From positions 4,136,181 to 4,200,180 of the forward strand of contig MU060312.1 of the NCBI GenBank assembly GCA_013265495.1: a stretch of DNA of 64,000 bases, in the 5' to 3' direction. The stretch comes from Vicugna vicugna (lineage: Eukaryota). The notes beneath the pieces are model-generated. The model was not told where the DNA came from. It made no database searches and saw nothing but the letters and a program-made list of their open reading frames with translations. Below, in pieces: positions 15,627 through 46,751 of this stretch. Both the position numbers and the translations under genes were made by a program. Position 1 is the stretch's first letter, and every line of letters begins with the position of its first letter.

Positions 15627-16557
15627 GAGTAACAGAATAAATGGGCTTGGTTTATTTTTTCAGTTGTAGACCAAGTGATTAATACAGCAGTGAAATGCAC
15701 TGTCCAGTCACCATTTTATTTACTCAACATGCTGACATTTCCTTCTTTTAAAAAGTTTTGATTTTTAAGTCTTTTAAATAAATAGTTATTTGAAGAAGTT
15801 GCCTCTATTTGAAGAGGCTGCATTTTTGTATCCTAGCTTATGTTCCTCAAACTCCTTTACACAAGATTTAATAATTTGGTATACTGGAGAAAACCTCCTT
15901 AAATGCCATGTAAGTTTTAATTTTTGTTTTGATTTTTGTTTTGTTGTAAAGTTTCCACTTGCCTTCCATTTCATCATTTTTGAGTTCTAAAGTATTATAT
16001 GCCAGTTTGTTTCCTGGTTCACTGTCCCCTCCTGGCAAACTCTCATTGTCTTCCTTTCTCCTCCTTTTACCTGTAGACTCATACTCTTTTTCCTTTTCCT
16101 TTTAACTCCTGTTCTACTTCAGACCCACTCCTATGAGATGCTGGAGAAGAGATCCTGTTTTCTCTTGTGGCACACATTTCTCCCGGACCTTCTACCCACT
16201 GCTTGTAACGGATGCAGCTGTTAGATATTGAGGGCAGTGTTCCAAGAATCAAGTAACCTGCAGGGAGACGCCTGGTGTAGAAATCAGACTGTCTGTCAAT
16301 ACCCTTTCCTTTGACACTGGTCTTGTGCTGATTCAGCTCCGCTTCCAGGACTGTGACAGTTGGCAGCCTTGCAGAACACTCTATTTCATGACTTTAATCT
16401 ACACTGTTGTTTCCATAGCCAGAAAAATCTTTCTTTCCTTAGAGAAAATTTGTAGGAGGTAACTGTATTCAAGTCCCAGTTAATTTAAAGAGTATATCAG
16501 GATGGATCTTTAAAAAACAAAACAAAACAAAACCAAGTTTAAAGCAATGAAGAGAAT

Positions 16558-16935
16558 AATTGCTTTTATTATCAAGTTGCTTAACAGACTCCTGTGTTAA
16601 CATCTAAGTGCTAGGCAATCAATGGCAGCAAACTATAAACATCCCTGTCTTTGCTCTTACAATAAAATCCTGTAAAGCAAATAATATGACCACTTCAGTA
16701 ATTTAACACAGACCTCCTATGGTTAATTTTCTCCAAAAGCTGCCGAACAGGAGTGGCTTATAAATTAGTATTATTCTGTCTTATAAAGAATAAGAAACAA
16801 AGATTGGAATAAATAATTAACAATAATAATAAAGAAATGTTTATGCCACAATGGATCACCATCAATATGCTTAATGAAACTTCTGAATTCCTTCAGAGAC
16901 TTCAGTAGAAAGTTACTATGAAATATTTTACCCTT
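16558..16935 (+). repeat. Left arm (378 bp) of a near-perfect inverted repeat
   Basis: Reverse complement matches 17760-18141 by hand alignment, except for 2 substitutions and a 4-bp indel. Confidence 0.95.
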
Positions 16936-17084
16936 CCAGCTGATAGAATTATTTCAGATTCTTGAAAGAAATATTGGATATTACCAATGCATACTTCTCA
17001 AGGCACAACTTTTGTCTTTTTAATATTTTTTTGACTTCAGGTTTAGTGGAAAAATTGCAGAAGGCAGACAGGAAGAGCAAAACA

Positions 17085-17370
17085 TAAACTATGTATTGAA
17101 TCCCTCTGTGCTTGGGTGTGCTCTGTATACTATGCTGGGAATCCAGAGTTAAGACGTTGTGTCTGAAGTGAAGGAACTCCAGTTGAATAGAAGGGTCAGC
17201 ATATGCAGGTGACGTTACAGCAGGAGAGCTGTATTTTCAAGCTATGATTGGATATTAGTAGAAGTGTCCCAGTGGAGGTCCTGAAGAATAAATAAGAGTT
17301 TGCTGGTGAGAGAAGAAATGATCTTGGGGTAGGACCAGTTAGTTCTCTGTGAGAACAGAGGTAATGCCCA
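17085..17370 (-). mobile_element. L2 fragment inside the inverted-repeat spacer
   Basis: tatgtattgaatccctctgtgcttgggtgtgctctg...gctgggaatccagag and ggaggtcctgaagaataaataagagtttgc resemble antisense L2. Confidence 0.5.
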
Positions 17371-17759
17371 ACCCTGAATGATACTGAACTAGACTCTAAC
17401 ATTGGGGTTTGATAGTCAAGGTCATTTAGAAGGACTATATTAATTAGGCTTGGAACTGGTGACTTATGTTGCTATTTCTCGATGATTAAGAAAGAAATAA
17501 AAGGCTATTGTTCAGTAAATTTTTTTAATCGAAAATAATTCTAGTTCAGCAGTTCACTTGTAACAGTGGACCACTCAGTAGTTAAGCCAAGTGGAAGTCT
17601 AAGTCTATTTATATATGCATAGGTAGACACAAGTGTTTGTATTTTCTAAAATACCTTTATTTAGCCATCTTTGTGGACAGAATTTTTCAAAAGGAGATGC
17701 AGTAAACAAAGTATTTGGCAAATCGGCATCATTTTGAAAAGGAGATAGCATTGGAACAT

Positions 17760-18141
17760 AAGGGTAAAATATTTCATAGTTAGTAACTTTCTACTGAAGT
17801 CTCTGAAGGAATTCAGAAGTTTCATTAAGCATATTGATGGTGATCCATTGTGGCATAAACATTTCTTTATTATTATTGTTAATTATTTATTCCAATCTTT
17901 GTTTCTTATTCTTTATAAGACAGAATAATACTAATTTATAAGCCACTCCTGTTCGGCAGCTTTTGGAGAAAATTAACCATAGGAGGTCTGTGTTAAATTA
18001 CTGAAGTGGTCATATTATTTGCTTTACAGGATTTTATTGTAAGAGCAAAGACAGGGATGTTTATAGTTTGCTGCCATTGATTGCCTAGCACTTAGATGTT
18101 AACACAGGGGTCTGTTAAGTAACTTGATAATAAAAGCAATT
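17760..18141 (-). repeat. Right arm (382 bp) of a near-perfect inverted repeat
   Basis: aagggtaaaatatttcatag...aacttgataataaaagcaatt is the reverse complement of 16558-16935. Confidence 0.95.
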
Positions 18142-20479
18142 TGAATGTCGATTGATAAATATATTCTTTGCTTTAAAGGTGATTGCTACTGAAGCCAGGG
18201 GTGTCCTTTGCATTTGACTCTCCTCCTTCCTTCTTGCTGACTTGCTTACAGTTGTCTTAGGTTTTGAACCAGGGCTGAGGAATTTCCTTTTACGTTTAAA
18301 GAGCTTGTAAGCATCTGAGGAGGAAACTTTTAAGTTACCTGCAGGTCTCTCCAAGGCCTGCTCCTAGGCTGATTTCTGCTTGTTGGCTTGGGTAGCCAAC
18401 CACGTAACTGCTTCTAGACTTGGGTTGGAGCCACTCCTGGGAGCTCGGGTGGTGCTCAGATGGCTGGAACCAGCAGCAGGCTGCCTGGTGGGCCTTTGTC
18501 TGGCCTGGCCAGAGGTGAGAAAAACTGGAATGAGAAAGTGGCGACTTCCCTCTCTCTGCTACTTTTCTCTCTTGACAGACAGACCAGTGTATTAAAAGCT
18601 CATCACTAATTTTGAATATACAAGTAGATATAATTTGCTGCCCTAAAAGCTTCAGTTTGTATAGAATGATCAGTTCCATGTGTGTATTTGTGTGCAGTTT
18701 GGTTATTCCTGAAAGCTTCTTAAATAAACAAATAGAAAAAACTACTGGAGAATGAGGAAACAATATTTTGAGAATGTTAGGATTTGATGTAAATGTTTTG
18801 TTGTTGTTTCTGGTTGTTGTAAAAATCAGGGTGATCCTATGCAACTATGTCTGCCTGGGTCTTTGCTTTTATTTTACAAAAGTGGAGAAAAGCAAGAAAA
18901 ATTCTCACATTTTATACAGATTATCTCCAGTAATAAAGCATTTTTGGCTCTTTGATGGAGAACTTTCAATAGTTCTTCTTTTTATGTTTTGGGTTGTAAC
19001 TGGCACTCTTAACTGCATTGGATTATAATTTGATAATTTTCATGTTTAAAATATTTTTAAAATAATTTTTTCTTTCAAGTACCAGAATCAAAGGAAAACA
19101 AAGCCGGGAAGTGAGGAATTATATAGCAATAACAATGTTTTCAATACTTAGTTTACTTTTAGAAAGATAACAGGAGCTTCCCCCTGAGAAGAGCGCCCTG
19201 AAAGCCACAGACAGGCTTGGAGCGTGTGCGCAGCCCGGTCCTGGTTTAGGCTGCGCTCAGACTGTCTGGCATCTGGTCGTTAGAGAGTATCTGGCTTGTT
19301 CAGAAATATGCGAAAGATCCAGTCGGCTGGCCACGACTGTCTGCTGTGGTGGTAGAAGAGGAAAATCTTACATTGTTTAAGATGTGTTTCATTAAAAGCT
19401 GAAAAAAAAACCCTCAAAACACAAGAGCGGGATTTGATCTAAAAAATCATTGAAGTTCCATCCATACCCTGCTTCTAACACAGCTGTAATGGTAGGTGAG
19501 CTTTTTCCATTCTTTGCCTCACTTTTTTCCTCCCCCTCTCCACCATCTCCATCTCTGTCTCTAACTGCGATGGAGCTGTGGGACTGAACTGGACGCCCTG
19601 ACCCTTGGGTGCACTTGGGACGTGATCTCTAGCTCTTTATCCCAGTTGCCCGGACTCAGCGAGCTGGTGGAGGAGGAAGCCTGTCCCTCTGTGGACGGGG
19701 ACATTGTGTGGAGCTGGCTCTCACCTGAGTGTGGCTCTCTTTGTACCCCTTCAACCTGCTCTCCTCTCTGATGACCCACCCCTTTCCCCCCATTGGTATT
19801 GAGGGATGAAGTTGAAGATAGAGTCGGTTATGCAGTTAAAAGCATCGTCCAGGTTCATTATGTTTATTCATACAATTCTCCTTCCTTGATATTCAAATTC
19901 TGGCACTAGGGAGATTGAGAAATTTTTGGTTTTCCTGGATTGTTTTTTTTGCTACTCTCAGCTATCTTCATTTGTCTTTAAATACTCATTTCAATTTGTT
20001 GAAGTATGGAAAATGAAGTGAAACATAACTTACATATATATCATTAAAATTCTTCCTTCATCAATCTTTGATTTTTAAAAATTCTTAGACTAACAAGCTC
20101 TGTGTATGTTGTATTCCAGAAGATTATCTGCAGATGTTTGACACATAGGGTTACTTTTAGAATTGCATTGCTTGTGTGGGCAATGGCCACCTTTTTTTCT
20201 GAAAGGATAGTGGGACCAGCCCCAGTTCACTGACTGATTTCCCTCACAGTGCTAGGCTTTTGGCGAGAGAGAGGAATGGATCTATGTGTCTTTGCACTAG
20301 CCTTGGGAGTGAAAGAAGGATAGAGATACAGGGTAAAGCAGAGCCAGTGTGTAAGTGCACAGCTGAGGTTTTCTTAAAAAAAGGAGGGGAGGAGAATTGT
20401 CTGTATCAGGATCACCTGGGGTGTTTGCTCAAGTTTTCTTACTCCAAACCATGGCGGATGGATATTAGTTAATATAGTA

Positions 20480-37183: not shown

Positions 37184-37347
37184 NNNNNNNNNNNNNNNNN
37201 NNNNNNNNNNNNNNNNNNNNNNNNNNNNNNNNNNNNNNNNNNNNNNNNNNNNNNNNNNNNNNNNNNNNNNNNNNNNNNNNNNNNNNNNNNNNNNNNNNNN
37301 NNNNNNNNNNNNNNNNNNNNNNNNNNNNNNNNNNNNNNNNNNNNNNN
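37184..37347. other. Assembly gap (164 N)
   Basis: Run of N. Confidence 1.
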
Positions 37348-46189: not shown

Positions 46190-46337
46190 NNNNNNNNNNN
46201 NNNNNNNNNNNNNNNNNNNNNNNNNNNNNNNNNNNNNNNNNNNNNNNNNNNNNNNNNNNNNNNNNNNNNNNNNNNNNNNNNNNNNNNNNNNNNNNNNNNN
46301 NNNNNNNNNNNNNNNNNNNNNNNNNNNNNNNNNNNNN
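46190..46337. other. Assembly gap (148 N)
   Basis: Run of N. Confidence 1.
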
Positions 46338-46453: not shown

Positions 46454-46751
46454 NNNNNNNNNNNNNNNNNNNNNNNNNNNNNNNNNNNNNNNNNNNNNNN
46501 NNNNNNNNNNNNNNNNNNNNNNNNNNNNNNNNNNNNNNNNNNNNNNNNNNNNNNNNNNNNNNNNNNNNNNNNNNNNNNNNNNNNNNNNNNNNNTTAANNN
46601 NNNNNNNNNNNNNNNNNNNNNNNNNNNNNNNNNNNNNNNNNNNNNNNNNNNNNNNNNNNNNNNNNNNNNNNNNNNNNNNNNNNNNNNNNNNNNNNNNNNN
46701 NNNNNNNNNNNNNNNNNNNNNNNNNNNNNNNNNNNNNNNNNNNNNNNNNNN
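46454..46751. other. Assembly gap (140 N + ttaa + 154 N)
   Basis: Run of N interrupted by an isolated ttaa at 46594-46597. Confidence 1.

What the first reader, a model, noticed from the sequence alone, without database searches (positions are those of the whole stretch)
16558..18141. Near-perfect 380-bp inverted repeat in non-TE intronic DNA of ARID1B
Seen: 16558-16935 is the reverse complement of 17760-18141, with only 2 substitutions and one 4-bp indel (agttactatg vs agttactaactatg), around an 824-bp spacer. The arms do not resemble any transposon I recognise, while other old repeats in the window look far more diverged from their consensus. The right arm follows the T-rich bias of the sense strand and the left arm is A-rich, so the left arm is probably the derived copy. 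Established: long inverted repeats in pre-mRNA form dsRNA bound and edited by ADAR, and inverted repeats can mediate inversion of the spacer. Inference: this could be a large pre-mRNA hairpin or an inversion/gene-conversion hotspot in a dosage-sensitive gene.
Basis: partly seen in the sequence, partly recalled or inferred. Interest (0 to 1): 0.75.

Follow-up and report, generated by a model that had tools for sequence, protein, structure and literature searches.

The report
Small inverted duplication in ARID1B intron
A 0.38-kb piece of unique intron DNA in a camel's ARID1B-type gene was copied backwards 0.8 kb upstream; the copy is real DNA shared by four related organisms, but it looks like an ordinary scar of faulty DNA copying or repair, and its effect on RNA is untested.

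Summary
Window 16558-16935 is the reverse complement of 17760-18141, with 2 transitions, one 4-bp indel and an 824-nt spacer. It is not an assembly artefact: independent short-read contigs from four organism labels (three studies) cross all four arm junctions. It is not a transposon: arms, spacer and flanks have no other copy in the 2.03-Gb genome, and there is no target-site duplication, Pfam hit or Rfam hit. Strand-composition asymmetry places the window inside a roughly 380-kb + strand transcription unit that ends in ARID and BAF250_C exons, as expected of ARID1B. The same asymmetry favours the right arm as the original and the left arm as the inverted copy (likelihood ratio about 56:1). 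The 4-bp indel is a later slippage loss, absent in one organism. A 3-substitution cluster in one common haplotype seems to sit in both arms. With the arm differences confined to the arm ends, this suggests but does not prove arm-to-arm gene conversion. The sense RNA would fold into a 377-bp stem (361 bp uninterrupted, about -650 kcal/mol); no RNA data could be laid. This scan has already noted several similar local inverted duplications elsewhere in the same genome. Verdict: real, ordinary, probably neutral.

The parts
16538..16557 (.). Left outer patch of extra homology (a 10-nt block, 5 extra nt, then a 5-nt block) directly abutting the left arm.
   Evidence: local alignment to the reverse complement of 18163-18177; one search shows extra outer pairs in the RNA fold (helix runs 3, 10, 3).
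16558..16935 (-). Left arm, 378 nt: the inferred derived, inverted copy. It is A-rich and C-rich on the + strand, against the local sense-strand bias.
   Evidence: repeat; none of 288 background windows is as extreme; LR 56:1; junctions 16557|16558 and 16935|16936 crossed by contigs in 4 runs.
16579..16590 (.). The two arm-distinguishing transitions (16579 and 16590). They are shared by all four organisms laid and form G.U wobbles in the sense RNA.
   Evidence: alignment; the left-flank contig ends at 16620 = 16590 + 30 in every run, as expected at a k=31 branch point; 361-bp uninterrupted helix.
16834..16866 (.). Cluster of three substitutions (16834 G>T, 16865 A>G, 16866 T>C) in a common haplotype of organism B, apparently in both arms.
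   Evidence: X2 core contig; nine B runs at share 0.94, which equals the loss of 63 words in each of the two arms; none higher; other B runs hold the reference-type words, so the cluster is polymorphic.
16915..16919 (.). Site where the left arm has lost one TAGT unit (a 4-bp slippage deletion). The deletion is absent in organism D.
   Evidence: (the X12 contig carries the undeleted form, and its collapsed core is 349 nt rather than 328 nt).
16936..17759 (+). Spacer, 824 nt of unique intron sequence; the loop of the predicted hairpin.
   Evidence: single copy in the genome; one contig, 16889-17810, spans it and both inner junctions in 3 runs; 16915-17789 in X12.
17760..18141 (+). Right arm, 382 nt: the inferred original segment, with composition typical of the sense strand.
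   Evidence: (junction 18141|18142 crossed by a contig starting at 18079 in all 4 runs).
18142..18162 (.). 21 nt next to the right arm with no counterpart on the left side (an indel at the outer breakpoint).
   Evidence: and direct reading.
18163..18177 (.). Right outer patch of extra homology to 16538-16557.
   Evidence: (pair I2).

Best explanation
This is a genuine local inverted duplication of unique intronic DNA. A segment now at 17760-18141 (perhaps up to 18177) of a large 5' intron of an ARID1B-type gene was copied once, in reverse orientation, and inserted about 0.8 kb upstream at 16557|16936. The likely cause (inferred) is a one-off template switch of a replicating or repair polymerase onto the opposite strand and back; the alternative is an inverted templated insertion at a break. 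This happened before the four sampled organisms (camels, according to earlier notes of this scan) diverged. Later, the left copy lost one TAGT unit by slippage. The arms may have been kept alike by arm-to-arm gene conversion or by repeated template switching. Because the + strand is the sense strand, the pre-mRNA should form a 377-bp near-perfect hairpin with an 824-nt loop, which would be removed with the intron. The most likely status is a neutral structural relic. Shown: it is real, two-copy, non-TE, shared among organisms, and its polarity is known. Inferred: the mechanism of origin, gene conversion, RNA folding in vivo and neutrality.
For: Reality: in each of 4 runs (4 organism labels, 3 studies) separate contigs cross the left-flank/left-arm junction, both inner junctions plus the whole spacer, and the right-arm/right-flank junction. 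They break exactly 30 nt past the arm-specific differences, as a k=31 graph must. The collapsed core lies at about 1.8-1.9x neighbouring depth in 3 of 4 runs.
Not a TE: the arm has exactly two places in the 2.03-Gb genome, and the spacer and both flanks have one each. There is no TSD, no Pfam hit over cut-off and no Rfam hit.
Gene context: ARID exon at C5599:4383489(+) and BAF250_C at 4407847(+). The + strand AT skew flips from positive to negative at about 4.01-4.04 Mb and stays negative through the window.
Polarity: within that transcription unit, none of 288 non-overlapping 380-nt windows is jointly as extreme as the left arm, and LR is 56:1 for the right arm being native.
Order of events: organism D has no 4-bp indel between its arms.
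Conversion hints: all 3 arm differences lie within 33 nt of an arm end (p = 0.005), and the B-haplotype cluster appears in both arms.
Hairpin: MFE -879.5 kcal/mol for 1.7 kb; duplex -647.5 kcal/mol; 361-bp uninterrupted helix.
Literature: fold-back and template-switch routes to inverted duplications and RNA hairpins are established (PMC3907307, PMC5453318, PMC8794818).
Against: No outgroup with an empty site could be examined, so the insertion event and its age are inferred, not seen. Microhomology at the junctions is 0-1 nt at the inner junction and ambiguous at the outer one, so no specific mechanism is identified. The arm identity needs no gene conversion if the duplication is young: P(no difference in 328 nt) is 0.19 at 0.5% divergence. 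The B-cluster argument rests on contigs that drop minor paths. In X2 the core contig lies at only 1.07x neighbouring depth, although depth among single-copy contigs varies up to 2.3-fold within a run. No RNA evidence of transcription, folding or editing was obtained.
Confidence: 0.8

Rival explanations
1. Ancient inverted repeat (older than camelids, possibly pan-mammalian) whose arms look young only because continuing gene conversion keeps re-matching them.
For: Arm differences are confined to the arm ends. There is an apparent concerted 3-substitution change in both arms of a B haplotype.
Against: The homology stops abruptly at both boundaries. The inner flanks show no decayed homology (shuffle p = 0.42), and only about 15 nt lie beyond the outer ends. 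The left arm still has fully inverted strand skews, which long residence in the intron or reciprocal conversion should have blurred. Two substitutions in 378 nt fit an age a few times the organisms' own divergence (0-3 differences in 1541 unique nt).
Confidence: 0.12
2. Functional RNA hairpin: the inverted copy is maintained because the pre-mRNA duplex is used, for example as an ADAR or Dicer substrate, a splicing or processing modulator, or a source of small RNAs.
For: The predicted stem is exceptionally long and perfect (361 contiguous bp, -647.5 kcal/mol). Medians for edited non-repetitive human dsRNAs are 144 bp, 30 contiguous bp and -185 kcal/mol (PMC11838218). Both arm substitutions are G.U-compatible in the sense RNA. 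The structure is kept in four organisms.
Against: Two G.U-compatible transitions have a 1 in 4 chance expectation. The organisms are so close (0.2% or less) that retention says nothing about selection. There is no Rfam match and no RNA run with usable coverage. Intronic dsRNAs are removed with the intron and are reported to be non-immunogenic (PMC12695637). Several similar neutral-looking duplications are noted elsewhere in this genome.
Confidence: 0.06
3. Assembly artefact: two haplotypes or a fold-back chimeric read mis-joined, so that only one arm exists in the animal.
For: Near-perfect palindromic structures are a known product of chimeric reads and mis-scaffolding (general knowledge). In X2 the core contig is not at double depth.
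Against: All four junctions, with their arm-specific variants, occur in independently assembled contigs of 4 runs from 4 organism labels and 3 studies. Core depth is about 1.8-1.9x in 3 runs. Twenty runs from 9 studies hold 0.89-0.98 of the words.
Confidence: 0.01
4. Single-copy non-autonomous DNA transposon with 0.38-kb terminal inverted repeats.
For: The overall geometry fits: long terminal inverted repeats around a short non-coding core.
Against: There is only this one copy in 2.03 Gb. No TSD beyond a chance 4-mer. No transposase remnant. Homology continues raggedly past the supposed termini. The right arm's composition is that of the surrounding intron.
Confidence: 0.02

Closest known systems
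Local inverted duplications and inverted templated insertions made by replication template switching or fold-back repair (FoSTeS/MMBIR-type events; fold-back inverted duplications with a spacer, PMC3907307; short-range template switches, PMC5453318 and PMC7954356; template switching that creates RNA hairpins, PMC8794818)
   Same: A unique local sequence is copied once in reverse orientation close to its source, leaving a single-copy spacer. There is no TSD and no mobile-element features. The outer breakpoint is ragged, with small indels and nearby substitutions.
   Different: The size is intermediate: arms of 0.38 kb, against tens of bp for short-range template switches and tens of kb to Mb for constitutional fold-back duplications. 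It is interstitial, with no terminal deletion. Junction microhomology is not evident.
Sex-chromosome palindromes with arm-to-arm gene conversion (human Y P1-P8, X palindromes; PMC3723533, PMC8327919) and actively maintained inverted repeats in C. elegans (PMC1803023)
   Same: Inverted arms of more than 99% identity around a unique spacer. There are hints of concerted change in both arms, and differences are confined to the arm edges.
   Different: It is 20-1000 times smaller, presumably autosomal, and carries no genes in its arms. Gene conversion is only suggested here, and there is no evidence of selection.
Intronic inverted-repeat dsRNAs edited by ADAR (inverted Alu/SINE pairs) and hairpin-RNA (hpRNA) loci
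   Same: Two inverted copies in one transcript are predicted to form a long intramolecular duplex.
   Different: The arms are unique DNA, not SINEs. The duplex is far more perfect: 361 contiguous bp against a median of about 30 (PMC11838218). No editing, small-RNA or expression data exist for it.
Other local inverted duplications noted by this scan in the same genome (SV2B, ZHX2, SORL1 and GALNT14 introns)
   Same: The same architecture: arms of 0.1-0.7 kb of unique intron DNA and spacers of about 1-6 kb. All were judged real and probably neutral.
   Different: They are independent loci. Those notes are unchecked here, and their ages are reported to range from polymorphic to pre-placental.

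Membership tests
Local inverted duplication (template-switch or repair scar) | Exactly two copies, close together, in opposite orientation | tested here: met
   two places in the whole genome, 824 nt apart, on opposite strands.
Local inverted duplication (template-switch or repair scar) | The copied sequence is unique local DNA, not a dispersed repeat | tested here: met
   arms, spacer and flanks have no further match at E <= 0.001. Caveat: very old, highly diverged TE ancestry would not be seen.
Local inverted duplication (template-switch or repair scar) | One copy sits in native context and the other is an insertion (empty site in an outgroup) | tested here: inconclusive
Indirect support: strand skew gives LR 56:1 that the left arm is the inverted insert.
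Local inverted duplication (template-switch or repair scar) | Breakpoint microhomology and/or breakpoint-proximal errors | tested here: inconclusive
   The inner junction has 0-1 nt of microhomology. The outer junction has 5-nt and 21-nt indels and two substitutions within 32 nt, which is compatible but not diagnostic.
Assembly artefact | Junctions unsupported by independent reads or samples | tested here: not met
   all four junctions are present in contigs of 4 runs from 3 studies.
DNA transposon or MITE with long TIRs | Multiple copies in the genome | tested here: not met
   only this locus.
DNA transposon or MITE with long TIRs | Target-site duplication at the element's ends | tested here: not met
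   the best match is a 4-mer with a 1-nt offset, which is chance level.
Palindrome maintained by arm-to-arm gene conversion | Arm identity above 99% | tested here: met
   2 substitutions and 1 indel in 378 nt.
Palindrome maintained by arm-to-arm gene conversion | Concerted evolution: lineage-specific changes present in both arms | tested here: inconclusive
   The X2 core contig carries 3 changes and no reference-type path. Nine B runs sit at share 0.94 and none higher. Other B runs keep the reference type. Contigs can drop a minor path, and arm phasing needs raw or long reads.
ADAR-edited intronic inverted-repeat dsRNA / hpRNA locus | Both arms lie in one sense transcript | tested here: met
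   the arms lie inside a + strand transcription unit inferred from skew and from downstream ARID and BAF250_C exons. This is inference from DNA, not RNA data.
ADAR-edited intronic inverted-repeat dsRNA / hpRNA locus | A-to-G mismatch clusters or arm-derived small RNAs in RNA data | not tested
RNA-like runs held only 2 of 7 words.

The most novel reading that the evidence does not exclude
The arms are actively homogenised by frequent arm-to-arm gene conversion, even though they are only 0.38 kb long and 0.8 kb apart. The resulting near-perfect 377-bp hairpin in ARID1B pre-mRNA would then be processed (hyper-edited by ADAR or diced into small RNAs), so that it influences processing or the level of a haploinsufficient chromatin-remodeller gene in this lineage.
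Probability: 0.05. Interest if true: 0.6.

Novelty: new member of a known kind. Interest (0 to 1): 0.27.

Why it matters
On its own it matters little. It is one more small, lineage-restricted inverted duplication of the kind that replication or repair errors leave in large introns, and the scan has already noted several in this genome. Three things make it a useful specimen. It is cleanly datable relative to later events: a slippage deletion, and a 3-substitution cluster that seems to have spread to both arms. It therefore offers a tractable test of whether gene conversion operates on sub-kilobase autosomal inverted repeats. And it would give the pre-mRNA of a dosage-sensitive gene one of the most perfect long intramolecular duplexes one could expect from non-repetitive DNA. 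That makes it a natural probe for how nuclear dsRNA of this quality is handled (ADAR hyper-editing, retention, dicing) in this species.

Tried and rejected
1. Assembly artefact: rejected, because all four junctions are present in four independent runs.
2. Transposon with long TIRs: rejected. It is single-copy, has no TSD, and no Pfam family passes its cut-off. The only hit, PirA-like at 16.1 bits against a cut-off of 27 in a flank ORF, is chance.
3. Known structured RNA: no Rfam match at E <= 1 in 16000-18700.
4. Fetching orthologous contigs from other mammals through a spurious 169-aa flank ORF (search for homologous proteins): no hits, so no outgroup.
The frequency estimate therefore rests on 264 kb.
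6. Testing the B-haplotype cluster with a 121-nt query: it showed the cluster is polymorphic within organism B, not fixed. This weakened my first reading that all B runs lack the reference type.
8. Depth as copy number: single-copy contigs differ up to 2.3-fold within a run, so the 1.07x core depth in X2 is neither explained nor decisive.
9. Decayed homology inside the spacer ends: none (shuffle p = 0.42).

Full report
**Observation.** The repeat is exactly as described. The repeat finder reports arms 16558-16918 and 17781-18141 at 99% complementarity. A gapped alignment extends them to 16558-16935 (378 nt) and 17760-18141 (382 nt), around an 824-nt spacer.
- The arms differ at two transitions, left-arm positions 16579 and 16590.
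- They also differ by one 4-bp indel: the right arm has two TAGT units in tandem and the left arm has one.
- The central 328 nt are identical.
- It is the only inverted pair of 80 nt or more within 10 kb in the whole window.
- It is the only pair with arms of 100 nt or more in 264 kb sampled from this contig.
- Just outside the arms lies a short split patch of further homology: 16538-16557 against the reverse complement of 18163-18177. On the right it is separated from the arm by 21 nt with no counterpart.

**Is it real DNA?** Twenty DNA runs from five organism labels and nine studies hold 0.89-0.98 of the sampled 31-mers of 16300-18400. I laid Logan contigs of four runs on 16200-18500: X1, organism A, possibly the source animal; X2, B; X12, D; X14, E. 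These come from three studies. Each run gives the four contigs that a k=31 graph must give for a true inverted repeat:
- left flank up to 16620, crossing 16557|16558 and carrying the left-arm alleles, ending 30 nt past 16590;
- 16889-17810, covering both inner junctions and the entire spacer;
- a collapsed arm core of 328 nt;
- 18079 onward into the right flank.

No run shows a joint or an alternative junction. Core depth is about 1.8-1.9 times that of its neighbours in X1, X12 and X14, but only 1.07 times in X2. Single-copy contigs differ up to 2.3-fold within a run, so depth is weak evidence either way. The junction contigs are what count. The mis-assembly reading is excluded, and the structure predates the split of these organisms. 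They are very close: 0-3 differences in 1541 nt of flank and spacer.

**Is it a mobile element?** No.
- The arm has exactly two places in the 2.03-Gb assembly, and the spacer and both flanks have one each.
- There is no target-site duplication around the whole unit or around either arm.
- No ORF has a Pfam hit over cut-off.
- There is no Rfam match.

**Gene context.** On the same contig, + strand, an ARID exon lies at 4,383,489 and BAF250_C at 4,407,847. The only other BAF250_C locus, on contig C11847, has its ARID exon 10 kb away, as in the compact ARID1A (identification by elimination; inference). In 10-kb samples taken every 20 kb, the + strand AT skew is +0.00 to +0.16 from 3.74 to 4.03 Mb, apart from one sample at -0.01. 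From 4.036 Mb on it is -0.07 to -0.18, mostly with positive GC skew, and stays so through the window. This is the known sense-strand asymmetry of transcribed mammalian DNA. It implies a + strand unit of about 380 kb that contains the window. The repeat therefore lies roughly 120-130 kb into an ARID1B-type gene, in a large 5' intron, and + is the sense strand.

**Which arm is the copy?** I used 288 non-overlapping 380-nt windows of that transcription unit as background (mean AT skew -0.109, mean GC skew +0.075).
- The right arm is typical: AT skew -0.095, GC skew +0.160.
- No background window is jointly as extreme as the left arm: AT skew +0.085, GC skew -0.136.
- A bivariate-normal likelihood ratio is 56:1 for the right arm being native and the left arm inverted. 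Background windows are that misleading in 0.3% of cases or fewer.

Direct proof, an empty site in an outgroup, could not be obtained. The only indirect route I found, a spurious flank ORF searched against predicted proteins, returned nothing.

**Later history.** Organism D (X12) has no 4-bp difference between its arms. Its spacer contig carries the undeleted form on the left, and its collapsed core is 349 nt long and reaches the inner boundary. The left-arm deletion is therefore a later slippage loss of one TAGT unit, shared by A, B and E. Together with 17129 (G in D and E), this fits the tree (((A,B),E),D).

In X2 (B) the core contig carries 16834 G>T, 16865 A>G and 16866 T>C, and no reference-type path is present.
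- Nine B runs have share 0.94. That is exactly the loss of the 63 words covering these sites in both arms (126 of 2071 positions).
- No B run scores higher than 0.94.
- A 121-nt query over the cluster shows that other B runs (X18, X19, X25-X28, X33) hold the reference-type words. These runs had lower shares, or were absent from it, so they carry other haplotypes.

The cluster is thus polymorphic and sits on the haplotype that is otherwise identical to the window. If only one arm carried it, random bubble resolution should have left the reference path in about half of those nine runs. This points to a concerted change in both arms, by gene conversion or by template switching between the arms (compare PMC8604942). 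It rests on contigs that can drop paths, so it is not proven.

All three arm differences lie within 33 nt of an arm end (p = 0.005). This fits conversion that rarely reaches the edges. It fits equally well with error-prone synthesis next to the breakpoints at birth, a known signature of replicative repair (from my own knowledge, not checked here). The arm identity itself needs no conversion if the event is young: P(no difference in 328 nt) is 0.19 at 0.5% divergence.

**Mechanism of origin (inferred).** To write the reverse complement of 17760-18141 into the + strand at 16557, a nascent + strand must leave its template, copy the + strand itself from about 18141 or 18177 back to 17760, and then return. 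That is a double template switch across a fork or during break repair. It belongs to the family of events described for fold-back inverted duplications with spacers (PMC3907307), and for short-range template switches that create hairpins (PMC5453318, PMC8794818). Microhomology is 0-1 nt at the inner junction. At the outer junction, the 15-nt displaced patch could be the remnant of a slightly longer copy, or a pre-existing short inverted repeat that seeded the switch. I cannot tell which.

**RNA consequence (predicted only).** The sense transcript 16500-18200 folds with an MFE of -879.5 kcal/mol.
- The arms pair over 361 uninterrupted bp, then a 4-nt bulge, then 16 bp more.
- The two substitutions are G.U wobbles.
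- The duplex energy is -647.5 kcal/mol.
- This is far beyond typical non-repetitive predicted human dsRNAs. Edited ones have medians of 144 bp, 30 contiguous bp and -185 kcal/mol (PMC11838218).

Such a duplex would be a good ADAR substrate. Being intronic, however, it should be removed in the nucleus, and in human cells such dsRNAs are reported not to be sensed by MDA5 (PMC12695637). No RNA run held more than 2 of 7 words, and my one read-laying run was used on DNA. Expression, folding and editing are therefore untested.

**DNA stability.** Published work finds that distance between inverted repeats reduces their ability to cause rearrangements (abstract of PMC10164571). With an 824-nt spacer, and the same structure in four organisms, I see no sign of a hotspot. 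Spacer inversion cannot be assessed with 31-mer contigs.

**Comparison and verdict.** Earlier notes of this scan report several two-copy inverted duplications of unique intron DNA in this same genome, which they call an Old World camel: SV2B, ZHX2, SORL1, GALNT14 and others (unchecked here). All were judged ordinary scars of replication or repair. This locus is a further member of that known kind. It is real, non-TE and lineage-shared, the left arm is derived, and it is probably neutral. Two questions remain open and modestly interesting: arm-to-arm conversion, and the fate of the RNA duplex.

Noticed in passing
window 16834, 16865, 16866 (equivalent to 17865, 17834, 17833 in the right arm): Three substitutions clustered within 33 nt mark one common haplotype of organism B that is otherwise identical to the window over 2.3 kb. 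So tight a cluster may be a single multinucleotide event.
   Followed up: partly
window 16591-16918 / 17781-18108, run X2: The collapsed arm-core contig of X2 lies at 1.07x the depth of its single-copy neighbours, against 1.8-1.9x in the other three runs. The core is the most AT-rich part (GC 0.32), so library bias is possible. Unexplained.
   Followed up: partly
G000:C5599 about 4,006,000-4,036,000 (upstream of the window; loci L019-L021): The + strand AT skew changes sign here, from A>T to T>A, and GC skew turns positive. This suggests a boundary between a minus-strand and a plus-strand transcription unit, that is, the likely 5' end of the ARID1B-type gene. L017 (3,956,181-3,966,180) has the highest CpG o/e (0.45).
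   Followed up: partly
window 37184-37347, 46190-46337, 46454-46593, 46598-46751: Four runs of N (606 bases in all).
   Followed up: no
window 16790-16910, runs X34-X39: Six RNA-like or metatranscriptome runs, including 'reproductive system metagenome', hold 2 of the 7 sampled words. That is the share expected of the variant-type arm, but it is too few words to interpret.
   Followed up: no
window 17129, 17331, 17396, 17560: Spacer differences between organisms: 17129 A>G in D and E; 17331 A>C in D; 17560 G>A and +T after 17396 in E. Together with the 4-bp indel they fit the tree (((A,B),E),D).
   Followed up: partly
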